The position numbers and the translations under genes are program-made. Shown here piece after piece: positions 27,401 to 57,651 of a stretch of DNA of 64,000 nucleotides (positions within the stretch are counted from its first letter, which is position 1; every line of letters begins with the position of its first letter). The notes under the pieces are model-generated. The model worked only from the letters and a program-made list of their open reading frames with translations, had not been told where the DNA came from and ran no database searches. The stretch lies in the IMG/VR virus record IMGVR_UViG_3300022866_000322, positions 157,343 to 221,342 of that record; one strand, given 5' to 3'.

Positions 27401-29647
27401 GAGTGTCCCTATAGTAAAAACTGTTGTGTCGACCGATACCACACCTTGCACTTGTTGAAATGCTCTGGTAATAGTAGTGTCTAAAATGTCGACAGGTAAC
27501 TTAGCAACTGCTCCGCTATTATATAATTGGTAATCTGCGTCAAATTCAATAATTGGTCTGCTGGCACGTTGTGCTTGATCTAATAATACTTCTTGATCAA
27601 GATACCCTGCTGTCTTTTCTATAACATCTATGTGTACCCATCTATTGCCACGGCTCCATGCATTTCTGTCCAGGCTAGATCTGTTTACTGTGATGTAATC
27701 TTGGTACTCTGGTTGTAAATATACTTCAAAACTTGCGCCTGAGCCCGACCCGCCTGTTACCGAAACAGGATTAGTAGGTAATACTGTGTAGTTTCCTCGT
27801 TGTTTAATCTTAAATGTCTTTATTGATCCAGACTCCGGGGCTGTTACTGTAATTATAGGATTAGCCTCGTATCCACTGCCGCCACTTGCTAGTGTAACTG
27901 CTGTAACAACACCATTTGTCAATGTTGCTGTGGCACTAGCCAAACTTCCAAATGCACTTGATGGATTTGCAAAAGTTAACGTTGGCGTTGCTAAGTAACC
28001 GCTACCGCCATCTACAATAGTTACCGCCGTGACTGCCCCTGAAGAAGGATCTATAGTTGCTGACAATACCGCGGTATCTTTAGTTATGCTATCAACTACT
28101 GCTATTGCCGCAGTAGTAAAAGTTCCGCCTTGGATAGTGACTCTATCATTGACTTGATAGTTTAGTCCTCCAGCTGTAACAAAACTATCGTTTAGAGTTT
28201 CCACACTGATTAGCTCGTCTTCAGGCACTAGTCTGATTCCTGTGCCTACACCTTCGATATAATAGTTTTTGTTTCGATAACTTGCTGTAACTGTACTGTC
28301 AAAACTAATTTTTAAACCATTTGTAAATACCACACCGTTAGGACTTGTGTAATTTATTTCGCCTACTATGTCCCTATCAGGATCTATAGTGTCAACTACA
28401 GCATCAACAATGTTTATGATGCCACTGGCACCTGAATCAGCTTGATTTTGGTAATATAAATTTGTTAATGGGGCAGTAATGTATGGTACAAGTTCATAAA
28501 CAGAGTTTCTAACAAACCACTGTTTACTTGCGTATGTAGCGCCACCTTTAATTCTTACTTTATTGTTTTCAGGCACAGCAATTTTACGTACCAAGAAAAT
28601 TCTATCATTGCCGGCAGCGTCAGGCTGTATTGACACAGTGTAAACAGAAGTCCTTTCGGATAACGGAATTTGTACACTCTGATCCAAGTATACGACACCT
28701 TCCTCAGTTCTAGCAACATCAATCCAGAAACTATCATCAATGTAATTTCTATTAACGAATACAACTGTAGCACCATCTAAATATGCAACAGGACCATCAA
28801 TGCCGCCGTATGTGTCAATTAACTCCTGTGGCTTGGCTCCTTGCACTTGATTAAATGCCAAATCAGTAGCATAACTTACTGCTTCTACTGTAGGGAGATC
28901 TAAAAAGCTATCTTGCGCTGTTGCGCCAGGTACCGTGAAAGTTACAGTGCCCGAGTCAGTTCCATTATTCGAAACTCCCAGTACTCCCCTAGTTTCAACG
29001 TTACTCAGATCAGGATCTATACCGTCCTTGCCTGGCTTGCCTTGTATCCAGAAGTTGTTTCCTGGGTTATTAATTACAAACTCGTATACTCCGCCACGTG
29101 CTAGTGCAATACTTGGGTTAGGCACGTTGTCACTGCCAGTAAATTCAAAAGCGTTGTTTACAGGATTATATGTTACAGTAAACGTCTGGGGTGTGCTTAT
29201 GCCACTGGATGTAATTTGTACTGGGTTAGGTCCTGAACTTAACCAATAGTACTGGCTGAAGTTTACAAATTTATCAAAACTTAACTTAGGATCATACGTA
29301 TAAAACTCATTGTCGAACAATCTGTTGTGATTGTTTGTTAGGCCGCCTTCGTATCCAATTTTATTAACAATGTCTACATAAGTTGTTGCATAGTCTACTT
29401 TGTTAGTTATTTGATCTTTAATTATCACGCCAGGTTCTAGCTGATAGTCTGCTCTCGATGCAGTTGGTTCAGATACATAGCTATCAGTTGCTTTATAAGA
29501 AGGTGCTAGTTTTCTACCAATGTAACCATTGACTTGTTTAAGTTGTGGTTCATTAACTAGCTGATCAACTGTAGCGTTTAAAAACTTTTTATTAGTATCA
29601 GTTTGAAAAACGTCAGGTAAAAACTGGTGAGTTTTGAATGCTGCCAT
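15488..29647 (-). CDS. Giant multidomain baseplate wedge / adhesin protein (4719 aa)
   Basis: Uninterrupted 14.1-kb ORF directly downstream of gp6. It has FG-GAP-like repeats (DNFGRTVSI, DLFGSSLAIS, NFGSSLAT, RFGTDIQL, EKFGTAIGI, DDYGADIDI), a YncE-like beta-propeller (FFKPDGTKMY, FFREDGSRMY, FSTDGTRMY, FREDGKELF, MRHDGTRLF) and GSGY beta-repeats. Confidence 0.85.
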   Translation of the reverse strand: MAAFKTHQFLPDVFQTDTNKKFLNATVDQLVNEPQLKQVNGYIGRKLAPSYKATDSYVSEPTASRADYQLEPGVIIKDQITNKVDYATTYVDIVNKIGYEGGLTNNHNRLFDNEFYTYDPKLSFDKFVNFSQYYWLSSGPNPVQITSSGISTPQTFTVTYNPVNNAFEFTGSDNVPNPSIALARGGVYEFVINNPGNNFWIQGKPGKDGIDPDLSNVETRGVLGVSNNGTDSGTVTFTVPGATAQDSFLDLPTVEAVSYATDLAFNQVQGAKPQELIDTYGGIDGPVAYLDGATVVFVNRNYIDDSFWIDVARTEEGVVYLDQSVQIPLSERTSVYTVSIQPDAAGNDRIFLVRKIAVPENNKVRIKGGATYASKQWFVRNSVYELVPYITAPLTNLYYQNQADSGASGIINIVDAVVDTIDPDRDIVGEINYTSPNGVVFTNGLKISFDSTVTASYRNKNYYIEGVGTGIRLVPEDELISVETLNDSFVTAGGLNYQVNDRVTIQGGTFTTAAIAVVDSITKDTAVLSATIDPSSGAVTAVTIVDGGSGYLATPTLTFANPSSAFGSLASATATLTNGVVTAVTLASGGSGYEANPIITVTAPESGSIKTFKIKQRGNYTVLPTNPVSVTGGSGSGASFEVYLQPEYQDYITVNRSSLDRNAWSRGNRWVHIDVIEKTAGYLDQEVLLDQAQRASRPIIEFDADYQLYNSGAVAKLPVDILDTTITRAFQQVQGVVSVDTTVFTIGTLTLTTGDRVIFASDLDDNVRNKIYNFTIEKAIDDPSDVYKAYLVEADDATVVDNNTVLVLSGTNGGKQWYFNGFSWTIAQEKTANNQEPLFDVVDSKGISYSDASTFTGTTFTGSKIFSYKRGTGSNDTVLGFPLSYKNFTNQGDIEFENTFDSQTFTYLAGTNNVVTPQKVNAGYLQKNVSTTTCARDNVWEIATNFSKQFKIYDFVYDGVTNLFPIDNLPDVSTNFPHIKVYVNNKIVSVGNFATTKVVDKFAVLVNPDLITKNDAVFVAIFNKDIPVTANAHYEVPINLDINTLNKNLSTVTLGQMRNHLIELKNNSLRVVGTVPGSSNLRDIVYKNTSGSILQHSAPAVYAGLFLNHPTMDSINAIKLANREYSKFRKNFLEVAGKIELDLNNVQTSFDAVLLQMHSVKNSSFPWFRSDMIPHGDDNRSLIPTYTVLDPEITAYEITSIFNDTIPSNKSVLVYVTRTVDDVTTKTLVVKGRDYTFNTDRAAITFTSNFRLLFEDKIDIVEYSDTDGSFIPETPTKMGMYPKFIPEKYLDNTLRTPANVIQGHDGSITPAFNDFRDDLLLELERRIYNNVKVEYDTDTFNIIDYVPGKFRDTDYTRAEFTQVLSQGFLAWVGTNRVDFSTNSYFSASDPFTWNYKAFRDIVNGETLPGTWRSIYRYFYDTDRPHTHPWEMLGFSKKPDYWETRYGVSPYTGGNSTLWSDLSIGYIHSGDRQGIDLRYQRPNLSEFIPVDDNGNLRSPEQMLVTDFDGSRANISYAVGDIGPVELAWRRSSEYPYALMLALALTKPARFYGLQADVHRYKRNSFTGQFEITDTSQHLTPTSLHVNGYVDANGVTQRTAGYLNWITDYITNLGAGSAPTVIQENLAKLNVQLLNKVAGYTDKKFIELLAEQSSPSSINNSVVIPDDNYALKIYKGSPIRKITYSAVIVQRTANGYTVSGYDITSPFFTIIPSEPNNNAYQVTDGDASAVIFRDFKKQKITIPYGFEFNSSQQVTDFLVGYQRFLQSQGFLFVDNDDSLKQQKDFILSVKEFLHWTTQGWRVNNILVLSPVSDTLKVFEQTAIVDEIKNAPFGSRVLDLNFKPINKNEFSVYREDNLFTFQSNAQKSVGFAELNLVQTEHLLILDNVTEFNDVIYVPELGNRQYRLKFVGYKTDSWNGSLELPGFMFSSDSIDAWGGGTDYLKGSIVQHKNRYYTALENITADPNFQTTKWKQFDKAELQSGMLRNLASNAQLGVSFYDIDNQPANEEIQLFSDGITGFRERQYFTDLGIDVTTQSKYYQGLITQKGTPNSINALEGGIFGNLDSDIDWYENWAMRVGEYGSLDTNAFIETPLSDTAITKNPTLIQFTDNNNAAQEGTVAIIENDIFKISGTYNANVFVTEDRTQFPLLRPLPVAGFVNLADVDTTLFNLNNYDSLSASIDKIGTGYKIWVAKDFNGSWNVFRATYIDGLVFILRSRDDGSAEVVFNENHGLAVDDVVVIKNFDDRFDGAYKVGNIIDTTRFSITITRNLEALQEEAVISGSGLLYRLSSAKISNPVDIQSVMPVSGWLENDKVWVENLDNDGNWGVYNKTSPWVYNSKAELDPSKLSGNDNFGRTVSIEPNLAQLMYVGSPGSGEGRVNAFTRSVTNSWTASFALSANSTGLDSFGYKVVNAQGYVAVSAPDSSSGKGYVYIFKDGIIQQILTDAAGSASDLFGSSLAISRDANYLYIGASGANKVFCYQLNLRTAVDPVLLPVERYNLVLDANVSVAVNDTITYQSPGTTSSASGTVVFDSTRVLTNTNVVIITGNVAAFTDTDLIAINGANVAANIVSDTQSVATGTFSNVSILTSDPTEVFVYSQLRAVEYVPTIEYSVSGETITFVTPPATNDVIQVFTRGSFYTNLTTITGNASTNFGSSLATNSDGSVLTVGSDTAVVGTQGNDGLLYAYHRTITEFTTDGTSASFTAPDAFANSYRVLLNGVELTQDLDYYIIAPSTVQFPDVQTAGLTLTVETNNFVQDQIISPSLTGINGQRFGTDIQLCGTGCNLYGSAPSYFANQYSSGAVYRLVNTGRVYGNVTGTVSNATVTSGDSIVINDRPVEFTGTTITDVANDINGTGIPGVTASNALVFISNVTSGETESHWRLQITSNVQVATEKLNITSASTGTGLTDLGIEIYKHTQVVTHPNQIGEKFGTAIGISQSVGKLAISSEGADTTTPTTFDIADTVTIFDSLSTTFVKIVKDSGAVYLYDLIANPYESEDNPSIFAFSQKLTAPGVETGDDYGADIDIVNDIMVIGVTNDSDITVGGGSVYTYYNEGSKPGWELLRYKEPRVAIDAINSAFIYNKTSETIINYLDILDPVKGKLLGAVEQELDYIEEFDPASYNTTTASTGISNDSFYWTTQQIGKTWWDTSVANFIDYEQSTLLYRSINWGSLFPGSTVTIYEWVESDVLPSQYVGNGGDGVPKNADDSAYTQSTFVDPGTGIIVSKYYYWVSGKTSVDPVTANRRISTTLLEQYIRSPKDQNIPYLGLTSPSSVNLYNINDKTTGSDVILHLDTTTVENNDQLIHNEFGLVQQGTTTSAIPQRVIDKLRDSLRGEDSTGRLVPDITLKPQDRLGILSRPRQGLFLDRSAALEVFVNEANRLLALHPVLLTTTATSLYVQQPFPASYDAQVASYTDVEYLDTTGFADGYTILIPQDSRYENRWSLLEFNGTSREFDLIRSQSYKTDLWWTPSEWYDSTYIAGNAIAHTVNTYGDIQKLVLANNDYIKILDDGAGNWSTYRYETTGQLSLIAAENATVTLSSLLYDTTITLGFDTAVFDAVAFDKQAGSEIGNIFDSLYTQIFINSLATDFNKLFFTIINYVFEEQKNPDWIFKTSFIDVLHNLRSLEQLPTYSKDNQDFYKQYIDEVKPYRTQLKEFTPVYTKTDTATGSWTDFDIPARWYAEENTFRSPNIQVTSDSTYFTTDLYQPYADNYKLKVGEIIVGNIGQNYTIAPNVEITGGGGSGANATATISAADGTVTSITVTKAGSGYTTTPNVVINGTGEGATAYAMLNSEFDSQGGYNTVRSIDSTIKFDRITYTSNVAQWTANVAYEDTVVVNGNFANSYDLNRIELDGNANVAPQDTTITDVFFKPDGTKMYIAGDTSNSVYEYTLGTPWEVTTASNVAVANVNVQDTSVQGLFFREDGSRMYTVGDTSNSVYEYRLATPWFVNTAANISVVSINSQETSATSVEFSTDGTRMYVLGTANDTVFEYELSIPWLASSATYSTRSKSVASEENIPTGMRFREDGKELFVTGQQYNKIWSYTLSTAWDISTATLNNSADLNATNPTGLYMRHDGTRLFVADDVGNFVQQYDFNSNGITQIDGNLYITSGNIIFYNNTAYLATNANVSSQTVFDFTRFTEIDSGNVLLSAADRITSYYVPSFGRPGKDINQLMFGTSYPGNKISGETFTSNSFTLTSNVIGFNYTGHKITSANTQQVDFVDRGFNLNDPIKIEGMYETFNFENNATFRVVSVSRDEMMLSGQPIESIVTLSLGESISANEGDYITQTNSTANARVLNNYTSVKEIAVIQEKQGFLELDANVVRVNGVATTANVMDVLGSGTANVKISNLYIDDLLDSNIASFYTDTALGTRPEDINIAGGFYLDAYNSHAPEELVPGRMYDTLEMRVFTNTASNTASYGFRVFEPMDRDRSYYRISANSTTTLTANLALDDVNIFVDNAALLPDPGTGVGGSPGEVFINGELIYYYQKYDDAKMLSADVWTANTEFATDSLITYSSNVFLVLGNVFANANAYINTSNVKQVFANTISQLRRGVDGTGANVHYANARVVDSSLAQQLPNIALATTNSLTGEKKVAANVTWRVSLNNTISANIGDYITQTGPTANVRILETVANANVVAVDFVDGNLRIANANVSINGTTTTANVSALNILGEVLSTGNVSVTGKTIKQDYLWKAYGTGDTLDSSTTEWAEYIKAERSYTP

Positions 29648-29658
29648 TGCTTATCTTC

Positions 29659-32600
29659 CTATACCCTATTAAGTTGTCCTGCTGTAATAGCAGAAATAAT
29701 TTGTACATCATTAACTGTTGCCGCACTTATAAGAATCTCGTTTGGCTCTGTGTTAATCTGATATAAGTTACCAAAACTGTTTGACCCCGTATTAGGTACA
29801 ATTATGATACTACTCACTGTTGGTGTTAATTCACTATGCAAATATGCACTTAGTTCACTCATGTAAAATGATTCTCCGAAGTCCCAGTTGTTGATATCAA
29901 AGTAAGTGTTGATAGATTCAATTATTAAACTCTTTACTTCGTTATCACTTACGTTGGAACTAGGATTCTTAACCACTTTAAATGTTGCTCGCAACTCTGT
30001 CTCTGCTTTGCTACCAAACAAAGGTTTGAACGTTGCCGCGTTGTATATTAAACTGTCACTTACAGTTTTAAGATTTTCGATAGTGCTGTATGCTGTTTGT
30101 AAGTCTTCACTGGTTGGTGCAACCGGCTCTGGCAATGTTGCTGTTGTATCTGTAATGTATGCAGTGTAGTCGTCACCATATGCCTTGGTTAATATATACA
30201 GATCTATTAGGTTGTTTGGACTAGGATCTATTCTATTATTGTTTGGACTATTATGCTTGTATTGAAATGATACCTGCTCTCTACCAATTCTGGCAATGTA
30301 ATTTGTAAGTAACGTTATTGCAGTGCCGCTGGATCGGAAAAACTTATTGTCAGTGTACGCATAAAAGATTGTATCAATTGCGTACAAAGATATGTTGTTT
30401 AGAACGTCGCTTTCAGTTGCATAACTAGAAACTATGTCTGTCTTTGCAACAGGATCGTATTGCAGGAAGTTTACGGTATCTTGCGACTCTACAAAATATA
30501 TATACTTGTTCTGTGGATTAACTGTAGGGGCAACAAACGTAACAAACAAGTCAGGATCGTCAGGTACACCATCTAAATTTTCATCTGGGAACGTAACTAA
30601 TATTTTCCTATTATCAACAGTGCCATCTTCGGCGATAACACGATTGTCGATAGCCCATGATTGAGGATAGAAAATACTATCCGAACTGTCAGGCTTTGTG
30701 TTGGTCCTTAGTATCTTAATCTCATCTATTAATGTTGTAGCAGTCCTTGAGTCGTATACCTTTGCGTTTGGGTCGAAATAAAATCGTGTTTCTCTGACGC
30801 TTTCGAAGAAATATTTTGTTCCCCTGCTGGTCACATTGTATTCTTGATTGTCGTAGCTTAATCTCAAGAACCAACTGTTATCTAAATTTGTTCCTGTAGT
30901 GCTACCTGCATTGGTAAGACTAAAATTCCCAGTACCAATGTTGGCTTCGCTGACAATTTTCCACTCCATTTCACTTATATCATATCGCAATGCGAATGTT
31001 TTGAAACTTAAGATATTATCAATAATTGTAGTTATAAGTGTTGCTGGCCATGAGTTTTCAAATACTGGTATAACCTCACCTACTATTGCTGTACTAGGAA
31101 CAACCACACTCATTATAGCGTTGCCAACTCCAGGAGTTGGATAACTTATCACGCTTGCCCATATACTTGTACGTTGGAACTCAGTTGTAGGAGTGCCAGT
31201 TATAAGTTGATTTTGTGCATTAAAGTACTTGCCCGACGGAGCATTAAACTTTATAAGAGCTCCTTGGGTTAAGAATATATAATTATCAGAACTAAATGTT
31301 CCTGTACTACGTCCACTACTTGTAGAAACTTGTGTAAACGTTGCTGTTGGTGTTTGTCGTGTGGCAGTTCTGTAGTACAACTGTTTTACATCAGTCTGCG
31401 AAATAATATCTTGTATGGTAGTTTGTACCAGATTACTTACTTCACTCCTACTTGTAAACTGGAATGTTGACGCTACAGTAGAAACATCTTCTTTGTAGAT
31501 TTCTCCGTCTTCAGAAAAAATGTTTGTACTAGAATACTTGCCTGTTGCATCAATTACATCTAAGTATCTGCTTATGCCTGAACTACTTCTATTAACTGCT
31601 TTTGCTTTTAATATAGTACTGAAAGTGGTATACGGCAAGACATTGTAATCTTCCCCCGATACCATGCGATTCTGTGTGTAATATTGTTGTGGTGCTTTTG
31701 TTCTAATCTCGTCAAGAGACTCACGACTACTTGCATTTGTTACTGTATACTGTAAGCTGGCGCGAACTGATAAAGTTTCAGTACGTCCTGTTTTGCTACG
31801 ATACGGAATATTAATTGTAATAGAACTCATTTCCTCAGGTGTAATCTTATATGTCTGATTATTTGACAATCTGTAGTACAGTCTAAAATTACCGTCGGGA
31901 ATGTTTGTAAACGACCCGTCACCAAACACTAAATCAATTTGATCATTTGCCCGAGTACCGACACTGTATAAATTTCTTTCTGACGTATTATTATAGATTA
32001 CATTAATACCATTCACAGCCGGGACTTTAGTCCATTCTGTATCAATGGTTCCGTTGGAGTCTAATCCATACAGCCATACGTCGCTGTTATTAATGTTATT
32101 AAAATTAACATTTACTATACGGTTAGGTAAACTCTCACTGACGTTAAAATTTAAATTAAGCAGTTCACCTTGCTTAAAGTAGAAGAAATATCCAGTATTA
32201 TTTGATGCATTACCTTGATTGTCGTTTCTGTATAAAAAATTAAACAGGCCGTTGGGCTGTGGATCTTTTTCGTATACATATTCATACTCTGCTGTGGATG
32301 CGCTTACTACTTCGAATCTTGTTGTGACTCCGGATATGCTGGTGTTAAAAGAATTGACCGGAATAATGTTGTTTAACATTTTTACAGTATACTCATCAGT
32401 TTTGATACCATTGAGTGTTTTTGTTGCTCCGGGTTTACCTATGGATTGTGTAGTAAGCAAAGAAGCATTAAGCACGGCCGTAAATTGTTCTAGCCAGTTT
32501 TCGTTAGTACTGTCATTCCAGTTGATAATCGTGTTTGCAAGATTGTTACCTTCGCTGTCAAAGACGCTTTCGCTAGTAGAAACACTTTGAAACTTAATAA

Positions 32601-32949
32601 AGCCAGTGGCAGGTATATTGCGCTTGGGGTTGTAACTGATTAGTTTAGCCAGTTTGAGAATACTGTCTCTGCGCTCTGCTGTGTCTAAGAAGTTTTCTCT
32701 AGCATTCAAATCAGTTCTGAATGCTAAACTTTGCCCTAAGAATGCAATTAAATCAATTAGTGCAATGTATTCACTTGATTCAGTAAAGTCATTGAAGTCT
32801 TCAGGATAGTAAGTACGCAAGTACTCGATCATGCTCTTACGTATCGTTTCAAAATCAAAACTTTGAAAGTTTGCGTCTTTAAATGTTTGATAAATTTTAG
32901 TCCAATCCTGTTGAACTAATAAACTTGTTTGTCTTGTAGTAGTGGCCAT
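29659..32949 (-). CDS. gp6: Baseplate wedge protein, T4 gp6-like
   Basis: DFETIRKSMIEYL..DF..SSEYIALIDLIA..DLNARENFLDTAERRDSILKLAKLISYNPKR; ES.DEIR..AP..Y..QNRMVSGEDY. Confidence 0.9.
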   Translation of the reverse strand: MATTTRQTSLLVQQDWTKIYQTFKDANFQSFDFETIRKSMIEYLRTYYPEDFNDFTESSEYIALIDLIAFLGQSLAFRTDLNARENFLDTAERRDSILKLAKLISYNPKRNIPATGFIKFQSVSTSESVFDSEGNNLANTIINWNDSTNENWLEQFTAVLNASLLTTQSIGKPGATKTLNGIKTDEYTVKMLNNIIPVNSFNTSISGVTTRFEVVSASTAEYEYVYEKDPQPNGLFNFLYRNDNQGNASNNTGYFFYFKQGELLNLNFNVSESLPNRIVNVNFNNINNSDVWLYGLDSNGTIDTEWTKVPAVNGINVIYNNTSERNLYSVGTRANDQIDLVFGDGSFTNIPDGNFRLYYRLSNNQTYKITPEEMSSITINIPYRSKTGRTETLSVRASLQYTVTNASSRESLDEIRTKAPQQYYTQNRMVSGEDYNVLPYTTFSTILKAKAVNRSSSGISRYLDVIDATGKYSSTNIFSEDGEIYKEDVSTVASTFQFTSRSEVSNLVQTTIQDIISQTDVKQLYYRTATRQTPTATFTQVSTSSGRSTGTFSSDNYIFLTQGALIKFNAPSGKYFNAQNQLITGTPTTEFQRTSIWASVISYPTPGVGNAIMSVVVPSTAIVGEVIPVFENSWPATLITTIIDNILSFKTFALRYDISEMEWKIVSEANIGTGNFSLTNAGSTTGTNLDNSWFLRLSYDNQEYNVTSRGTKYFFESVRETRFYFDPNAKVYDSRTATTLIDEIKILRTNTKPDSSDSIFYPQSWAIDNRVIAEDGTVDNRKILVTFPDENLDGVPDDPDLFVTFVAPTVNPQNKYIYFVESQDTVNFLQYDPVAKTDIVSSYATESDVLNNISLYAIDTIFYAYTDNKFFRSSGTAITLLTNYIARIGREQVSFQYKHNSPNNNRIDPSPNNLIDLYILTKAYGDDYTAYITDTTATLPEPVAPTSEDLQTAYSTIENLKTVSDSLIYNAATFKPLFGSKAETELRATFKVVKNPSSNVSDNEVKSLIIESINTYFDINNWDFGESFYMSELSAYLHSELTPTVSSIIIVPNTGSNSFGNLYQINTEPNEILISAATVNDVQIISAITAGQLNRV

Positions 32950-45980: not shown

Positions 45981-46403
45981 ATGTCATGGTTATTTGAATC
46001 TAAAGAAATAGAAGTACTACCAGAAGATTGTGTTGGATTCGTTTATTTGATAACGAATTTAACAAATAACCGTAAATACATCGGGAAGAAGCTTGCACGG
46101 TTTAAAACCACCAAGCCCCCACTTAAAGGCAGGAAGAACAAACGCCGTGGAACAAAAGAAAGTAACTGGCGTGAATATTATGGCTCAAACGACGAACTCA
46201 ACAAAGACATAGAACAACTAGGCACAGAAAACTTTCAAAGAGAAATACTCTACTATTGTAAAAGCAAGGCAGAATGCAGTTATATCGAGGCACGAGAACA
46301 ATTCAGACACAAAGTCTTAGAAACACCACAATACTATAACGGACATATACAAGTCCGTGTCCATGGCTCCCACATTATAAACAAATTAAGTAGTAACAGC
46401 TAA
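45981..46403 (+). CDS. Small GIY-YIG-family nuclease-like protein
   Basis: GFVYLITNLTNNRKYIGKK (GIY-YIG), YYGSND, FQREIL, E..EQF..YYN. Catalytic domain only. Confidence 0.8.
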   Translation: MSWLFESKEIEVLPEDCVGFVYLITNLTNNRKYIGKKLARFKTTKPPLKGRKNKRRGTKESNWREYYGSNDELNKDIEQLGTENFQREILYYCKSKAECSYIEAREQFRHKVLETPQYYNGHIQVRVHGSHIINKLSSNS

Positions 46404-46826
46404 CACAGGCTAATCTCGTGTGTACCAAACCTGACAGTAACGTGTGCAGGGACGTAAGACTTGCCGCTACAGCAAGCACTCAATCACTACCCATATGGAT
46501 GAAGACTCTCAATGCTAGAGTTTGATTGTTTGAACAGGATTCAATAAAGCTAAAAAGACGTAGTAGCGATACTACACGTTTATGTAATATGTTAGCGTAT
46601 GTTATATAAATCGCCGTTGTTATAAAGACGGAGCTCGAGGTACCGGACAACCGCCTCTGTAATGCTCTAATGCTAAGTGACTGTTATACTCAGATGAAGC
46701 AGTTTACTTTTTTGCCCGCCCTGGGCAAAGAGTGACCATGTGATCTAGATGAAACGTCTAAAAACATATCATTAAAAAACAAGTTGATGAGTGATAACGA
46801 AATCAACAGACTAACGAAGTTAGTCT
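46404..46826 (+). ncRNA. Candidate structured non-coding RNA or origin-like element (unassigned)
   Basis: ~420 nt with no ORF in a gene-dense genome. It contains many stems, several with G-U pairs (details in findings). Confidence 0.55.
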
Positions 46827-54988: not shown

Positions 54989-56173
54989 ATGACACAAGCA
55001 CTATTAGAAAGCCGTTGGGGCGAAACAAAAGATGCCCTGTTAGAAGGACTAAATGGCTCCAAGCGTACTACAATGGGAGTTATTCTTGAAAACACCCGCA
55101 AGAGTTTGCAAGAGACCGCTACTGCTGGCTCAACAGCCGCTGGTAACGTTGCTACATTGAACCGTGTAATTTTACCAGTCATTAGACGAGTAATGCCAAC
55201 CGTTATTGCTAACGAAATTGTTGGTGTACAGCCTATGACAGGTCCAGTTGCACAGATTCACACACTACGTGTACGTTATGCTGATAACGCTACATCAACA
55301 GCAGGTGCGCCATTTGATACAAGCGTTACTGCTGGTGACGAAGCACTATCACCATTTAAGATTGCTACAGTATATTCAGGTAGTACTGCTACCGGTCGTG
55401 CTGACAGCACAAGTACACTTGAAGGTACACCAGGTAACAAGATCAACGTCCAGATCTTAAAGCAAGTTGTTGAAGCTAAGACACGTAAGCTATCAGCACG
55501 TTGGACATTCGAAGCCGCTCAAGATGCGCAAGCAATGCACGGCTTAGATATTGAAGCAGAAGTTATGGCAGCTCTTGCACAAGAGATTACAGTTGAAATT
55601 GATCAAGAAGTTCTTGGTTCACTTCGTAGTCTTGCTGGTACTGAGTTCACATATAACCAGGCAGCAGTATCTGGTACAGCTACTTACGTTGGTGATGAGC
55701 ATGCCGCATTGGCAGTTCTTATCAACAGAACAGCTAACTTGATTGCATCACGCACACGTCGTGGCGCAGGTAACTGGGCAGTTGTTTCACCAGCCGCTTT
55801 AACAGTTCTCCAAAGCGCAACAACAAGTGCTTTTGCACGTACAACTGAAGGCACATTTGAAGCACCTACAAACACCAAGTTTGTTGGTACATTGAATGGC
55901 GCAATGAAAGTTTATGTAGACAGCTATGCTGGCGATGCACAGGCAGTTCTAGTTGGTTACAAAGGTTCAAGCGAAGCAGATGCAGCCGCATTCTATTGCC
56001 CATATGTTCCATTAATGAGCAGTGGTGTTGTGTTGGATCCATCAACACTTGAGCCAGTAGTTGGCTTTATGACCCGCTACGGGTACGTAGAGCTCACCAA
56101 TACAGCATCATCGTTTGGTAATGCAGCCGACTATCTCGGGGAAATCGCAGTTTCTAACTTGTCTTTCCAGTAA
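54989..56173 (+). CDS. gp23: Major capsid protein
   Basis: RRVMPTVIANEIVGVQPMTGP..KTRKLSARWTFEAAQDAQAMHGLDIEAE..EITVEIDQE..FYCPYVPL..GFMTRYG. Confidence 0.97.
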   Translation: MTQALLESRWGETKDALLEGLNGSKRTTMGVILENTRKSLQETATAGSTAAGNVATLNRVILPVIRRVMPTVIANEIVGVQPMTGPVAQIHTLRVRYADNATSTAGAPFDTSVTAGDEALSPFKIATVYSGSTATGRADSTSTLEGTPGNKINVQILKQVVEAKTRKLSARWTFEAAQDAQAMHGLDIEAEVMAALAQEITVEIDQEVLGSLRSLAGTEFTYNQAAVSGTATYVGDEHAALAVLINRTANLIASRTRRGAGNWAVVSPAALTVLQSATTSAFARTTEGTFEAPTNTKFVGTLNGAMKVYVDSYAGDAQAVLVGYKGSSEADAAAFYCPYVPLMSSGVVLDPSTLEPVVGFMTRYGYVELTNTASSFGNAADYLGEIAVSNLSFQ

Positions 56174-56192: not shown

Positions 56193-56218
56193 AAAAGGGG
56201 TCGCAAGACCCTTTTTTT
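56193..56218 (+). terminator. Intrinsic terminator after the capsid gene
   Basis: AAAAGGGGTC-GCAA-GACCC followed by TTTTTTT. Confidence 0.9.
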
Positions 56219-56275
56219 GTGACTTAAAACTCTATTTGATTCAACACCTTTTCTGTCAATATAAAACAAAATAAC

Positions 56276-56306
56276 TTGACTTAATATGACGGTTAGTGTA
56301 TAAATA
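56276..56306 (+). promoter_or_regulatory. Composite promoter: sigma70 TTGACT-17-TATAAA whose -10 box is also the late promoter TATAAATA
   Basis: TTGACT at 56276-56281 and TATAAATA at 56299-56306; the predicted +1 lies just before the first aptamer. Confidence 0.8.
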
Positions 56307-56311
56307 TATAT

Positions 56312-56363
56312 ACGTTCAGCTGAGAGGCCGGAAGTAGACTTCATTATTAGTCGAAGGAACGCA
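56312..56363 (+). ncRNA. Glutamine-I riboswitch aptamer (glnA RNA motif), copy 1
   Basis: P1 CGTTC/GAACG; P2 GCT-GAGA-GGC; CGGAAGTA E-loop strand; P3 GACT-TCATTATT-AGTC; GAAG. This fits the glnA motif layout as I recall it. Confidence 0.85.
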
Positions 56364-56368
56364 TTATC

Positions 56369-56420
56369 ATCGTTCATCTCGAAAGAGACGGAAGTAGGTA
56401 ATGGTTACCGAAGGAACGCA
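56369..56420 (+). ncRNA. Glutamine-I riboswitch aptamer (glnA RNA motif), copy 2
   Basis: P1 CGTTC/GAACG; P2 TCTC-GAAA-GAGA; CGGAAGTA; P3 GGTAA-TGG-TTACC; GAAG. Compensatory stem changes relative to copy 1. Confidence 0.9.
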
Positions 56421-56447
56421 CCTAACTTTAAAAAGGAGGGTGTTAAA

Positions 56448-56555
56448 ATGACAATGTGGACTCAATATTGTAGACTACATGCACTTGATGACTATCGCAA
56501 GTTATGCATGTTGAAACTTTTGTTGTTGCGTACATTACACAACACATACAAGTGA
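56448..56555 (+). CDS. 35-aa small protein under riboswitch control (MTMWTQYCRLHALDDYRKLCMLKLLLLRTLHNTYK)
   Basis: Strong SD AAGGAGG 8 nt upstream; bracketed by the aptamers and a terminator; below the ORF-track size cutoff. Confidence 0.75.
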   Translation: MTMWTQYCRLHALDDYRKLCMLKLLLLRTLHNTYK

Positions 56556-56561
56556 ACTTCG

Positions 56562-56585
56562 AGGGGTGTAACTGCCCCTTTTTTT
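56562..56585 (+). terminator. Intrinsic terminator after the small ORF
   Basis: AGGGGTG-TAAC-TGCCCCT followed by a T run. Confidence 0.8.
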
Positions 56586-56622
56586 ATAACTGCTATTACA
56601 TATTATTTAAGGAGGATCTTGG

Positions 56623-56907
56623 ATGAATACAGCTACAGAAGTAAAGTGCGAAACGCTCAATATCCGCATAGAACCCAAAGTTCGAGATCTAATTGATCGT
56701 GCGGCGAAGTCACGCGGCAAAAATCTCACGGACTTCATACTGGAGTCTGCTCGTCTCGCTGCAGAAGACACTCTGCTCGACCAGGTGATCATGGCGACCA
56801 GCCCAGACGCCTTTGCGCAGTTTCAGGCTCGCTTGGATATGCTACCTAAGCCTAATGACCGTTTACGCAAAACTATGCTCACGCCTGCTCCCTGGGAGCG
56901 TGAATGA
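56623..56907 (+). CDS. tacA: TacA/DUF1778 ribbon-helix-helix antitoxin (orphan)
   Basis: ETLNIRIEP..RDLIDRAAKSRGKNLTDFILESARLAAED.L..F.ARLD..P.PN.RLRKTM.TPAPWE closely follows the TacA pattern; AAGGAGG RBS; about 53% GC by hand count. Confidence 0.88.
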   Translation: MNTATEVKCETLNIRIEPKVRDLIDRAAKSRGKNLTDFILESARLAAEDTLLDQVIMATSPDAFAQFQARLDMLPKPNDRLRKTMLTPAPWERE

Positions 56908-56944: not shown

Positions 56945-57030
56945 CTACTGTTCATATAAATCTTTATATGTTCTTATGCGGAACCAAACCGCGTAGGCCT
57001 AGAACGCCACTTAATTTAAGGAGAAACAAA

Positions 57031-57651
57031 ATGGGAAGACCTATAGCAAAAAAGTTTATTGGCGATGGCGTTGGCAAGATTGCAATTACAGCAGTTAAGT
57101 TTGCAAGCGGCAGCGAAGTTCTTAGCGGTGCAGATATTCAAAGACAAAGAACAGCTAAAAGTTTCGTTGTATCTGACGGAGCTAAAACAGAAACATGTAC
57201 ACTGGTTAACAAGTCAATTGGTGCCTTGGGTGCTAGTGAATTTACCATCAACGTTACCGACAACGATGGCGACCAACAGCAAGTTACCAAGATGACCAAC
57301 AGAAAAGTTTACACTGAAGGTACTACTTGGAAACAGTGGACAAAAGATGCCGACGGCTCAGCATCGGGTGCAGTTCAAAAAACAATCACAGGTGCAACAG
57401 CGGCCAACCCAGTTGTTATTACATCTGCCGGTCACGGACTTGCAAATGGAACTAAAATTTCAATCCGTAAAGTAGTTGGTATGGTTGAGCTTAACACTGA
57501 AACCGGCTATACAGTGGCAAGTACTGCAACTAACACTTTTGCATTATCTGGAGTTGACGGTAGTGGATTTACTACTTACACATCAGGTGGTGATGTAACT
57601 GTTGCGGCAGCAGGTGCAGACGATGTGATAATAGATACACAACAGTCTTAA
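57031..57651 (+). CDS. Virion protein with a C-terminal beta domain (E1_FCCH-like, common in phage tail proteins)
   Basis: ITGATAANPVVITSAGHGL.NG..I.I..V.GM.ELN..YTV..NTFAL. Start moved to the ATG at 57031 (AAGGAG RBS). Confidence 0.65.
   Translation: MGRPIAKKFIGDGVGKIAITAVKFASGSEVLSGADIQRQRTAKSFVVSDGAKTETCTLVNKSIGALGASEFTINVTDNDGDQQQVTKMTNRKVYTEGTTWKQWTKDADGSASGAVQKTITGATAANPVVITSAGHGLANGTKISIRKVVGMVELNTETGYTVASTATNTFALSGVDGSGFTTYTSGGDVTVAAAGADDVIIDTQQS

What the first reader, a model, noticed from the sequence alone, without database searches (positions are those of the whole stretch)
56276..56585. Phage-encoded nitrogen sensor: tandem glutamine riboswitches controlling an unannotated 35-aa peptide
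Seen: a self-contained unit of promoter, two aptamers with identical core (CGTTC..CGGAAGTAG..CGAAGGAACGCA) but different compensatory P2/P3 stems, a strong SD, a 35-codon ORF and a terminator. Established: glnA-motif glutamine-I riboswitches occur, often in tandem, in cyanobacteria and marine proteobacteria upstream of nitrogen genes; in cyanobacteria one activates the glutamine-synthetase inactivating factor IF17. Inference: the phage reads host glutamine (N status) and makes a small basic/Leu-rich helical peptide in response. The peptide might target glutamine synthetase, PII or an ammonium transporter, or tune lysis/latency to nitrogen supply. I recognise no family for the peptide and cannot say whether this module has been described.
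Basis: partly seen in the sequence, partly recalled or inferred. Interest (0 to 1): 0.88.

Follow-up and report, generated by a model that had tools for sequence, protein, structure and literature searches.

The report
Phage glutamine riboswitch gating a microprotein
A jumbo phage carries a self-contained cassette in which two glutamine-sensing RNA switches control translation of a conserved, unannotated 35-residue helical peptide; the same cassette turns out to be common in aquatic phages, and neither the databases nor the papers I could search name the peptide family.

Summary
Rfam RF01739 (glutamine riboswitch) matches twice in tandem, at 56311-56365 (46.7 bits) and 56369-56422 (61.1 bits; gathering score 35). 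The pair is preceded by a conserved sigma-70-like promoter and followed by a strong SD, a 35-codon ORF (56448-56555) and an intrinsic terminator. The cassette lies between the major capsid gene and a tacA-like gene of a jumbo phage.

The expression platform is an SD-sequestering hairpin. It starts in the aptamer's conserved 3' GCA and shows compensatory C-G/U-A changes across 81 loci. This fits the published Gln-ON translational model for cyanobacterial gifB.

The peptide belongs to a real microprotein family ("family A"):
- About 93 distinct sequences in more than 200 viral and metagenome loci.
- 0 disrupted copies among 199 assessable loci.
- dN/dS of 0.2-0.3, an invariant Cys8 and a net charge of +3 to +8.
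- AlphaFold2 predicts a single helix (pLDDT 92).
- No Pfam, PHROG, NCBIfam or PDB match, and the domain never occurs inside a longer protein.

It is the commonest peptide behind phage Gln riboswitches. It is present but unannotated in the cultured OM43 phage Melnitz, and in about half of the loci it is followed by, or fused to, pqqA.

The peptide's target is unknown. A host nitrogen-assimilation protein (IF7/IF17-like logic) is the leading guess but is unproven. I rate this a new variant of a known kind, of moderately high interest.

The parts
56276..56304 (+). Sigma-70-like promoter: -35 TTGACT (56276-81), 17-nt spacer, TG + -10 TATAAA (56299-304). The predicted start lies about 56310-56312, right at the first aptamer.
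   Evidence: Read from the sequence. Hexamers and spacing are conserved in L030, L064 and L006 while the spacers diverge. Not listed by the scan because of its T6 rule.
56311..56365 (+). Glutamine riboswitch aptamer 1 (the proximal copy of the tandem pair)
   Evidence: RF01739, 46.7 bits against a gathering score of 35, E=4.5e-7, full model. Compensatory P2 changes in related loci.
56369..56422 (+). Glutamine riboswitch aptamer 2 (the distal copy, attached to the expression platform)
   Evidence: RF01739, 61.1 bits, E=4.9e-11, full model.
56418..56443 (+). Expression platform: an SD-sequestering hairpin. The 5' arm GCACCU (56418-23) overlaps the aptamer's conserved 3' GCA. The 3' arm is GGGUGU (56438-43). 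An inner CUU/AAG pairing is also predicted.
   Evidence: Minimum-free-energy hairpin of about -10 kcal/mol in nearly all of 94 distinct linkers. On alignment A2 (81 loci) 92% of cells are paired and 29 cells carry changes on both sides (C-G to U-A). 0 of 500 shuffles reach the observed value, and all slid registers score worse.
56433..56440 (+). Shine-Dalgarno sequence AAGGAGG(G), 8 nt upstream of the ATG
   Evidence: Sequence. Conserved across loci.
56448..56555 (+). 35-codon ORF (including stop) encoding a family A microprotein: a basic single helix with an invariant Cys8
   Evidence: ORF list. Family alignment A1. dN/dS 0.2-0.3. Intact in 199/199 assessable homologous loci. AlphaFold2 helix over residues 3-34, pLDDT 92. 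22 representative clusters, all 29-72 aa.
56561..56587 (+). Intrinsic terminator that closes the cassette
   Evidence: 8-bp stem with 4 G-C pairs, a 4-nt loop and a T-run. Equivalent terminators are present in L030, L064 and L006.
54989..56173 (+). Upstream neighbour: the major capsid protein gene, with its own terminator near 56197-56220. Context only, not part of the cassette.
   Evidence: PHROG 138 major head protein, E=6e-101. 66-69% nucleotide identity to jumbo-phage capsid genes. Pfam Gp23.
56623..56907 (+). Downstream neighbour: a TacA-like antitoxin gene with no toxin partner in this window. Context only; it is a separate insertion.
   Evidence: PF08681 TacA1, E=8e-23. The related cassettes in L030, L064 and L006 lack it. 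Sibling contig L353 has tacA plus a GNAT gene.

Best explanation
The unit is an autonomous, phage-borne glutamine-responsive expression cassette.

Host RNA polymerase starts at a sigma-70-like promoter, and the transcript begins directly with two glutamine-I (glnA-type) aptamers.

At low glutamine, the 3' tail of the distal aptamer (GCACCU, which includes the C that forms the ligand-induced long-range G-C pair) base-pairs with the 3' half of the extended Shine-Dalgarno sequence (GGGUGU). Translation is blocked.

At high glutamine, ligand binding captures that tail, the hairpin opens and ribosomes load. This makes it a translational ON switch. The tandem aptamers probably sharpen the threshold.

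The product is a 35-residue, strongly basic, single-helix microprotein with an invariant cysteine and a heptad-like hydrophobic seam. It acts in trans on a cellular (or phage) protein.

My best guess for the target is a component of host nitrogen assimilation. The peptide would then be a functional analogue of the cyanobacterial glutamine-synthetase inactivating factors, which are the known output of this riboswitch class. The phage would adjust host nitrogen and energy metabolism only when the infected cell is nitrogen-replete.

What is shown: the aptamers, the covarying anti-SD helix, coding conservation, and the helical prediction. What is inferred: the direction of switching (by analogy with gifB), action in trans, and the target.
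For: Aptamers: two full-length RF01739 matches above threshold.

Expression platform:
- A hairpin overlaps the aptamer's terminal GCA and the SD in nearly all of 94 distinct linkers.
- It is 92% paired over 81 loci, with 29 compensatory cells and 0/500 shuffles reaching the observed value.
- The same arrangement, and its melting by glutamine to allow initiation, was proposed for Synechocystis gifB, where reporters showed Gln/NH4+-dependent activation (PMC6212724).

Peptide as a functional product:
- 105 of 109 assessable phage Gln aptamers are followed within 60 nt by SD+ATG and an ORF of 28-65 aa. None is followed by a long gene.
- Family A is the largest cluster in that sample (35 of 105).
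- It is intact in 86/86 and 113/113 assessable loci.
- dN/dS is 0.2-0.3 in three subgroups.
- The N-terminal two thirds are the most conserved part, Cys8 is invariant, and all members carry a net charge of +3 to +8.
- AlphaFold2 predicts a single helix with pLDDT 92.
- It is always a stand-alone protein of 29-72 aa.

Autonomy of the cassette:
- It has its own promoter and terminator.
- The flanking genes differ between phage types: the capsid gene here, tmRNA in Melnitz-like myophages, other genes in podovirus-like contigs.

Link to nitrogen metabolism:
- About one fifth of phage cassettes in the unbiased sample encode DUF4278-like (YRG) peptides at the same position. Two of the three sequences tested fell below Pfam's cut-off.
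- DUF4278 is the domain of the GS inactivating factors (PMC6212724).
Against: - Nothing here measures glutamine binding or switching for this RNA. The ON direction rests on analogy.
- Family A shows no detectable similarity to DUF4278. It also shows none to the other riboswitch-linked peptide families (hhalign probabilities of 2% or less).
- The Melnitz paper states that its OM43 host encodes no glnA and that Methylophilaceae lack glutamine riboswitches (PMC9004378). Melnitz nevertheless carries a family A cassette. If that statement is correct, glutamine synthetase cannot be the universal target.
- In about half of family A loci, and in none of the loci with other peptide families, pqqA follows within 100 nt, overlaps, or is fused in frame. 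That points to C1/PQQ physiology, or simply to a shared host clade, rather than to nitrogen assimilation.
- The host of this jumbo phage is unknown.
Confidence: 0.55

Rival explanations
1. The peptide is made in response to glutamine but acts on the phage's own programme rather than on host nitrogen assimilation. Possible targets are transcription, translation or tmRNA function, or lysis timing. Glutamine would then serve as a general readout of host vigour.
For: - Hosts of at least one carrier (Melnitz/OM43) are reported to lack glnA (PMC9004378).
- In Melnitz-like myophages the cassette sits between ssrA and the late-transcription coactivator gene.
- In the window it sits inside the structural-gene block.
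- Small basic helices are a common form of phage-encoded inhibitors of host machines (general knowledge).
Against: - No consistent neighbour across phage types.
- No similarity to any known phage regulator, holin or antiholin.
- No transmembrane segment: mean Kyte-Doolittle hydropathy over 18-residue windows is at most 0.71, and the net charge is +4.
Confidence: 0.22
2. The family A peptide works with PqqA and PQQ-dependent C1 metabolism. It might act as a helper or regulator of PqqA processing, or simply as the upstream ORF that places pqqA under glutamine control by translational coupling. The window copy would be a stand-alone remnant of that operon.
For: - A pqqA-like ORF lies in the same locus in 59 of 108 family A loci in IMG/VR, at -31/-11/-1 nt (overlapping), +61/+84 nt, or fused in frame in most of them, but up to 1.5 kb downstream or upstream in a few. 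It reaches TIGR02107 at 44-48 bits against a cutoff of 20 and PF08042 at 40-44 bits.
- 55 of 113 metagenome loci have it within 500 nt.
- It follows none of the loci that encode other peptide families.
- The linkage appears in at least six divergent family A subgroups.
Against: - The window has no pqqA-like ORF in 64 kb and a terminator 5 nt after the stop codon.
- Melnitz has its pqqA-like ORF about 30 kb away from the cassette.
- Cultured Methylophilaceae phages carry pqqA without the cassette.
- The linkage may therefore only reflect a shared host clade and a shared insertion spot.
- Purifying selection on the peptide sequence is not explained by a pure coupling role.
Confidence: 0.1
3. The short ORF is a cis-acting leader. 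Only the act of translating it matters: a ribosome at the stop codon would mask the terminator and allow read-through into tacA and the downstream genes. The peptide itself would have no function.
For: The terminator stem begins 5 nt after the stop codon in the window and 7 nt after it in L030/L064, close enough for a terminating ribosome to interfere. In some loci pqqA overlaps the ORF end, which is typical of coupling.
Against: - dN/dS is 0.2-0.3, and Cys and the aromatic residues are invariant.
- Conservation is highest at the N-terminus, not at the C-terminus as would be expected for arrest or leader peptides.
- The distance to the terminator and the kind of terminator vary (20 nt in L006, none obvious in L095), and the downstream genes differ.
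Confidence: 0.08
4. The riboswitch is an OFF switch or is non-functional here. Glutamine would stabilise a fold that keeps the SD closed, or the aptamers would be relics and the peptide constitutively expressed.
For: The direction of switching was not measured. For the related glutamine-II class, the crystal structure suggested SD sequestration on ligand binding (my own recollection of PMC6698751; I did not read it here).
Against: - Both aptamers keep every invariant core position.
- The anti-SD helix uses the very nucleotides that the ligand-bound fold needs, so the two are mutually exclusive.
- Reporter data for type 1 and type 2 switches both showed activation (PMC6212724).
- The element is conserved across hundreds of loci.
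Confidence: 0.05

Closest known systems
Type 1 glutamine riboswitch of cyanobacterial gifB, controlling the GS inactivating factor IF17 (Klahn et al. 2018, PMC6212724)
   Same: The aptamer family is the same (RF01739). The output logic is the same: a small regulatory protein rather than an enzyme. The proposed platform is the same: the nucleotides just 3' of P1, including the linchpin C, pair with the ribosome binding site and are released by glutamine, giving an ON switch.
   Different: - It is encoded by a phage, not a cyanobacterium, and at least one host clade is reported to lack the riboswitch altogether.
- The aptamers are in tandem.
- The product is a 35-aa single helix with an invariant Cys and no DUF4278/YRG motif.
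- Its target is unknown.
Glutamine riboswitches already reported in phage genomes: cyanophages (McCown 2017, PMC5473149; S-SCSM1 PMC9602691; S-CREM1 PMC9964418), OM43 phage Melnitz and Pelagibacter phage Mosig (PMC9004378)
   Same: Same RNA family in phage genomes. Melnitz carries a true homologue of the whole cassette, with the riboswitch at L345 684-732 and a family A ORF at 755-850.
   Different: - Those reports list the aptamer only.
- In Melnitz it was read as controlling the upstream ssrA gene.
- The downstream ORF is not annotated; an antisense CDS is annotated instead.
- None describes the peptide family, the anti-SD platform, the tandem form, the jumbo-phage context or the scale (more than 200 loci).
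Downstream-peptide / glutamine-II riboswitch with short ORFs in marine picocyanobacteria (Weinberg 2010, PMC2864571)
   Same: A glutamine-sensing RNA in front of very short conserved ORFs (17-100 aa) of unknown family.
   Different: The aptamer class is different (RF01704, a pseudoknot). Those ORFs were later shown to be DUF4278/IF17-like, and they are chromosomal in cyanobacteria.
Tandem riboswitch architectures (tandem glnA RNAs noted by Weinberg 2010; tandem glycine aptamers)
   Same: Two complete aptamers for the same ligand lie a few nucleotides apart, with one expression platform after the second. More switch-like control is expected.
   Different: No evidence here for or against cooperativity. 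The apo-state fold suggests cross-pairing between the two aptamers, but no covariation supports it.
Small phage-encoded inhibitors of host proteins (general class)
   Same: Size, basic charge, a single helix, its own promoter and terminator, and a 'moron'-like placement.
   Different: No sequence or profile similarity to any member. I know of no other case in which such a peptide is gated by a metabolite-sensing RNA.

Membership tests
Glutamine riboswitch, type 1 (Rfam RF01739, glnA RNA) | Covariance-model score at or above the curated gathering score over the full model | tested here: met
   46.7 and 61.1 bits against a gathering score of 35, model positions 1-53 of 53, for both copies.
Glutamine riboswitch, type 1 (Rfam RF01739, glnA RNA) | Three-stem architecture with invariant junction sequences (CGUUC / CGGAAGUAG / CGAAGGAACGCA) and variable but paired P2 and P3 | tested here: met
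   The invariant columns of alignment A2 are exactly these cores. P2 and P3 vary with pairing kept, and RNAalifold shows P2 changes on both sides.
Glutamine riboswitch, type 1 (Rfam RF01739, glnA RNA) | Selective binding of L-glutamine with a conformational change | not testable with these tools
   Needs in-line probing, ITC or a reporter.
Glutamine riboswitch, type 1 (Rfam RF01739, glnA RNA) | An expression platform in which the nucleotides 3' of P1 pair with the ribosome binding site (the gifB model) | tested here: met
   The 56418-23 / 56438-43 helix is 92% paired over 81 loci with compensatory changes, 0/500 shuffles reach the observed value, and slid registers score worse. Model text in PMC6212724.
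GS inactivating factors IF7/IF17 (Pfam DUF4278, PF14105) | Match to the DUF4278 profile / repeated YRG motif | tested here: not met
   The window peptide gives no Pfam hit at E<=1, and none of the 57 family members hits PF14105. Other phage cassette peptides do hit it: 36.9 bits for one sequence, above the 25.3 cut-off, and 19.9 and 23.4 bits for two others, below it.
GS inactivating factors IF7/IF17 (Pfam DUF4278, PF14105) | Small, strongly basic protein whose synthesis is gated by a glutamine riboswitch | tested here: met
   35 aa, net charge +4 (family range +3 to +8), directly behind the riboswitch.
GS inactivating factors IF7/IF17 (Pfam DUF4278, PF14105) | Binds and inactivates glutamine synthetase type I | not testable with these tools
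   No complex prediction or assay is available, and the host is unknown.
PqqA (TIGR02107 / PF08042) | Profile match with the E-x-x-x-Y core | tested here: not met
   The window peptide has no NCBIfam or Pfam hit. The neighbouring or fused ORFs in other loci do match, at 44-48 bits.
Holin / membrane-active phage peptides | At least one hydrophobic transmembrane segment | tested here: not met
   No 18-residue window has a mean Kyte-Doolittle hydropathy above 0.71, and charged residues occur throughout. Only chance-level hits to a holin family, 2 of 57 members at E=0.06.
Family A riboswitch-linked microproteins (defined here, alignment A1) | 28-40 aa; M-x-x-[WYF]-x-x-[YWF]-C-[R/aromatic]-[KR] start; basic helix; directly behind a glutamine aptamer and an anti-SD linker | tested here: met
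   The window peptide is the first row of A1 and is 83% identical to L186 and 60-66% identical to L006, L030 and L064. In the BLAST clustering of the unbiased sample, which did not include the window, those relatives fall in the largest cluster.

The most novel reading that the evidence does not exclude
Aquatic phages of several morphotypes (jumbo phages, T4-like myophages and podovirus-like contigs) widely carry portable 'riboswitch-microprotein' cassettes. These would let the virus read the infected cell's glutamine pool by itself, even in hosts that have no such riboswitch. The phage would respond by making one of several unrelated host-directed microproteins.

Family A, the commonest of these, would be a new class of single-helix, cysteine-dependent effector. 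It would tie nitrogen status to host energy and C1 metabolism, as suggested by its operon link to phage pqqA.

This would overturn the published view that phages rarely use riboswitches, and it would give a first case of metabolite-gated phage effectors.
Probability: 0.4. Interest if true: 0.85.

Novelty: new variant of a known kind. Interest (0 to 1): 0.68.

Why it matters
A 2017 survey of riboswitch distribution found only two glutamine aptamers in phage genomes and concluded that phages rarely use riboswitches (PMC5473149).

Here, capped scans returned at least 120 viral contigs and at least 120 metagenome contigs with the element, almost always in front of a microprotein. The commonest of those microproteins has no name in any database. 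In the one cultured phage found to carry it (Melnitz), it was overlooked and the riboswitch was assigned to the wrong gene.

If the cassette works as inferred, it is a compact, transferable sensor-effector unit through which a virus conditions its manipulation of the host on nitrogen status. That bears on how phages cope with nutrient-limited hosts in lakes and oceans.

It is also directly testable, because a cultured host-phage pair exists (OM43 strain H5P1 and Melnitz) and the RNA is small.

The side observation is that Methylophilaceae phages carry unannotated pqqA genes, often under this riboswitch. This suggests a new auxiliary metabolic gene for methylotroph phages.

Tried and rejected
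I used DNA patterns and the full-library HMM search instead.
- The single genome-contig scan was wasted. My pattern (aptamer 3' end plus W..[YFW]C codons) was too loose for 596 Gb: 119 of 120 returned loci lack an aptamer and are chance matches. Only L296, a 26-kb contig binned in a 'proteobacterium' MAG, is real. I therefore cannot say whether the cassette exists in cellular chromosomes.
- blastn of the cassette against isolated phages found nothing at E<=1e-3. At E<=10 only Melnitz was a true hit. The Dinoroseobacter/Roseobacter N4-like and Venkman hits are chance matches with no aptamer.
- Profile-profile comparison of family A with three other riboswitch-linked peptide families found no relationship, despite superficially similar basic N-terminal helices.
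- PDB sequence search with the family profile gave only chance hits with E>0.7.
- I did not run fold search, because a single helix cannot give a meaningful fold match.
- I tested the idea that the first aptamer's tail and linker (CAUUAUC) pair with GGUAAUG in P3 of the second aptamer as a relay. It appears in the apo minimum-free-energy fold and both segments are conserved in all family A tandems. However, other tandem classes use a different register, and RNAalifold prefers a hairpin between P1-3' of aptamer 1 and P1-5' of aptamer 2. No covariation supports either, so I keep it only as speculation.
- Leader-peptide/attenuator reading: considered and ranked low (see rivals).
- Minus-strand ORFs over the same DNA, as annotated in Melnitz: open in at most 6 of 69 distinct sequences, so rejected.
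Full report
**What is there**

The window is part of a jumbo-phage genome.
- The ORFs around the finding are portal, head-maturation protease and major capsid protein (PHROG hits with E of 1e-57 to 1e-109).
- The capsid gene is 66-69% identical at the DNA level to those of 280-470 kb phages.
- An identical capsid protein occurs on contigs of 95-232 kb in many samples.

Between the capsid gene (54989-56173, with its own terminator) and a tacA-like gene (56623-56907) lies a 450-nt stretch in which the source pipelines call no gene. In that stretch Rfam's covariance model for the glutamine riboswitch (RF01739) matches twice, full length and above threshold. The matches are at 56311-56365 (46.7 bits) and 56369-56422 (61.1 bits).

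The sequence shows the other elements directly:
- A TTGACT-17-TATAAA promoter with an upstream TG (56276-56304).
- An AAGGAGG Shine-Dalgarno sequence (56433-56440).
- A 35-codon ORF (56448-56555).
- A hairpin plus T-run terminator (56561-56587).

The promoter hexamers and spacing are conserved in three related contigs while the spacer has diverged.

**How the RNA is likely to work**

I collected 94 distinct aptamer-to-start-codon linkers from viral contigs. In nearly all of them the minimum-energy fold is a hairpin. Its 5' arm begins with the aptamer's conserved 3' GCA (GCACCU in the window, 56418-23). Its 3' arm is the distal half of the extended SD (GGGUGU, 56438-43).

On an alignment of 81 loci (A2) this helix is paired in 92% of cells. 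Two of its positions switch between C-G and U-A in 9 and 20 sequences. No shuffle out of 500 reaches the observed covariation, and every slid register is worse.

The G of GCA is also the last pair of P1. The following C corresponds to the cytosine that forms the ligand-induced long-range G-C pair in the crystal structure, as summarised by Klahn et al. They proposed exactly this arrangement for Synechocystis gifB: pairing with the ribosome binding site, melted by glutamine. They also showed nitrogen-dependent activation with reporters (PMC6212724).

I therefore read the window element as a translational ON switch. The direction is inferred, not measured.

The role of the first aptamer is open. 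It has no platform of its own. Apo-state folds suggest cross-pairing with the second aptamer, which would make the response steeper, but there is no covariation to test this.

**Is the ORF real?**

- 105 of 109 assessable distal aptamers are followed within 60 nt by SD+ATG.
- The ORFs are 28-65 aa (median 40), never a long gene.
- BLAST clustering gives a handful of peptide families.

The largest family (35 of 105) is the one the window peptide belongs to. I call it family A.

Targeted scans added more. In total there are about 93 distinct peptides in more than 200 loci. Of the loci that contain the aptamer plus the W-x-x-[YFW]-C codons, 86 of 88 (viral) and 113 of 119 (metagenome) have an intact ORF. 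All eight exceptions simply run off the contig end. None is frameshifted or lacks an SD.

Nei-Gojobori estimates in three indel-free subgroups give pN/pS of 0.29-0.50 and a median pairwise dN/dS of 0.20-0.30. The other five reading frames are open in at most 6 of 69 distinct sequences.

**What the peptide looks like**

- All members start M-x-x-[W/Y/F]-x-x-[Y/W/F]-C, followed by basic residues.
- Hydrophobic positions recur at about 4, 8, 12, 16, 21/22, 25 and 30.
- Net charge is +3 to +8.
- The cysteine is invariant also in the BLAST-defined cluster, which did not use it as a criterion.
- AlphaFold2 with the family alignment predicts one uninterrupted helix over residues 3-34 (mean pLDDT 92).
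- There is no transmembrane segment.

A profile search of 1.84 billion representative proteins finds 22 clusters, all 29-72 aa, so the helix never occurs as a domain of a larger protein. Cluster members come only from metagenomes and are unnamed or called 'hypothetical protein'.

Pfam, PHROGs, NCBIfam and PDB give nothing. Profile-profile comparison with three other riboswitch-linked peptide families is negative.

**Context in other phages**

The nearest relatives of the window cassette (L006, L030, L064, L186 and others) have the same promoter, tandem aptamers and terminator. L064 also has the same position after the capsid-gene terminator. Their peptides are 60-83% identical to the window's.

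Tandem aptamers are confined to this subgroup and a few neighbours: 18 of 108 viral loci and 36 of 113 metagenome loci.

The cultured OM43 phage Melnitz has a single-aptamer version. RF01739 matches at L345 684-732 (52.8 bits). The same type of linker follows, then an unannotated 32-aa family A ORF at 755-850. The GenBank record annotates an antisense CDS there, and the paper interpreted the riboswitch as controlling the ssrA gene that lies upstream of it (PMC9004378). That paper also reports that Methylophilaceae hosts have no glutamine riboswitch and that the host lacks glnA.

**An unexpected linkage**

In 59 of 108 family A loci from IMG/VR, and in none of the loci with other peptide families, the same locus holds a 23-aa pqqA ORF. 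In most it follows within about 100 nt, overlaps the family A ORF by 1-31 nt or is fused in frame. In two subgroups it lies 1.5 kb downstream or 320 nt upstream. It is a confident PqqA match: TIGR02107 at 44-48 bits against a cutoff of 20, and PF08042 at 40-44 bits. In the metagenome loci, 55 of 113 have pqqA within 500 nt.

tblastn finds pqqA-like ORFs, mostly unannotated, in ten of the twelve matching phage records. These are all cultured Methylophilaceae phages: MEP301, MEP401, MEP402, Venkman, P19250A and the four Melnitz genomes. The weaker matches are two Acinetobacter phage records and one uncultured podovirus. In the three checked (MEP301, MEP402 and P19250A), no riboswitch lies within 500 nt of pqqA.

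This identifies methylotrophs of the OM43/LD28 group as hosts for much of family A. It also raises a possible functional tie to PQQ.

The window has no pqqA and ends its cassette with a terminator.

**What it most likely does**

The firm part is this. It is a phage-autonomous, glutamine-gated cassette whose product is a conserved helical microprotein acting as a protein, not as a mere translated leader. The evidence for that last point is purifying selection, N-terminal rather than C-terminal conservation, variable downstream genes and variable terminator spacing.

The soft part is the target. This aptamer class in cyanobacteria gates the GS inactivating factor. About a fifth of phage cassettes encode DUF4278-like (YRG) peptides at the same place; of the three sequences tested, one passes Pfam's cut-off (36.9 bits against 25.3) and two fall below it. 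On that basis I rank a host nitrogen-assimilation protein first. The reported absence of glnA in OM43 and the pqqA linkage keep this below even odds.

My estimates:
- Gln-ON translational control: about 0.8.
- Trans-acting peptide: about 0.75.
- Nitrogen-assimilation target: about 0.3.

**Comparison with what is known, and novelty**

The aptamers are ordinary members of RF01739. The platform matches the gifB model. Phage glutamine riboswitches have been listed in a few genomes (PMC5473149, PMC9602691, PMC9964418, PMC9004378).

In the library I could search, I found no description of the following:
- The peptide family.
- Its prevalence.
- The covariation support for the platform.
- The tandem jumbo-phage form.
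- The pqqA linkage.

Ames and Breaker 2011 is not held, so I could not check what it says about downstream ORFs. I therefore rate this a new variant of a known kind.

**Limits**

- My genome-contig scan was mis-designed, so presence in cellular chromosomes is unresolved.
- The host of the window phage is unknown. The Rfam families Polynucleobacter-1 and freshwater-2 in the window hint at a freshwater or estuarine proteobacterium.

Noticed in passing
L025 6627-6790, L048, L049, L079, L106, L172 4477-4629, L181 6449-6598 and about 50 further loci; also phage records MEP402 (L349 502-573), P19250A (L348 502-573), MEP301, MEP401, Venkman, Melnitz: Phage-encoded pqqA. A 23-aa ORF ([21 protein letters not shown]..) scores 44-48 bits on TIGR02107 (cutoff 20). 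In most of these loci it follows within about 100 nt of, overlaps, or is fused to the riboswitch-controlled family A ORF. It is also present, with nothing annotated under the match in five records and a 'hypothetical protein' in the four Melnitz genomes, in cultured Methylophilaceae phages. It may be an unrecognised auxiliary metabolic gene that boosts PQQ supply for methanol dehydrogenase. No paper in the searched library mentions it.
   Followed up: partly
L345 (Melnitz MZ577097) 684-850: In Melnitz the glutamine riboswitch lies 3' of ssrA and is followed by an unannotated 32-aa family A ORF on the plus strand. The record annotates an antisense 33-aa CDS (gp89) over the same DNA, and the paper assigns the riboswitch to tmRNA control. 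Both look like mis-assignments.
   Followed up: yes
window 56623-56907; compare L353 4635-5425: The TacA-like antitoxin gene (PF08681, E=8e-23) has no toxin partner in the window. A sibling contig with an identical capsid gene and cassette (L353, 232 kb) carries tacA plus an overlapping 169-aa GNAT acetyltransferase gene (tacT-like). The window sequence diverges from it a few codons into that gene. The two therefore look like population variants, one with a complete module and one with an orphan antitoxin.
   Followed up: partly
window 56953-57033: A freshwater-2 RNA (RF02980, 63.7 bits) lies directly upstream of the ORF starting at 57031, which has a weak major-tail / E1_FCCH-like hit. It is preceded by the motif ATAAATACTACTGTTCA. 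A close variant, TATAAATACTAYTGTTCAGTAG, follows the cassette in L006, L030 and L064. This may be a phage late promoter plus a leader RNA.
   Followed up: no
window 46398-46531: A Polynucleobacter-1 RNA (RF01718, 93.7 bits, E=8e-19) on the plus strand, just after the ORF that ends at 46403. It is a structured RNA of unknown function, here in a jumbo phage.
   Followed up: no
window 15488-29647 (minus strand): A single ORF of 4,719 aa, followed by one of 1,096 aa (29659-32949). This is a giant protein gene typical of some jumbo phages. I did not examine it.
   Followed up: no
L001-L120 (IMG/VR): Besides family A and the DUF4278-like peptides, phage glutamine riboswitches precede at least four more conserved microprotein families with no known function.
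- 64-65 aa with the motif NINGxGTSGY.
- 50-51 aa with SRPRxEKNILSxDPRLQKI.
- 46-53 aa ending in YITDNPFYP. Two members of this one also contain a YRG motif.
- 32 aa, MKIKNNWQLILIK...
   Followed up: partly
window 56353-56420: In the ligand-free minimum-energy fold, the tail and linker of aptamer 1 (GGAAC.CAUUAUC) pair with GGUAAUG..GUUAC of aptamer 2's P3. Both segments are conserved in all family A tandems. Separately, the P1 3' strand of aptamer 1 can pair with the P1 5' strand of aptamer 2. Either pairing could couple the two aptamers, but no covariation is available.
   Followed up: partly
P0001 (72 aa, from the representative library): One predicted protein contains two family A repeats. 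They are joined by residues that read like a translated aptamer end plus linker (..NAPNCEKEGGT..). This is probably a gene-calling or assembly artefact across duplicated cassettes.
   Followed up: no
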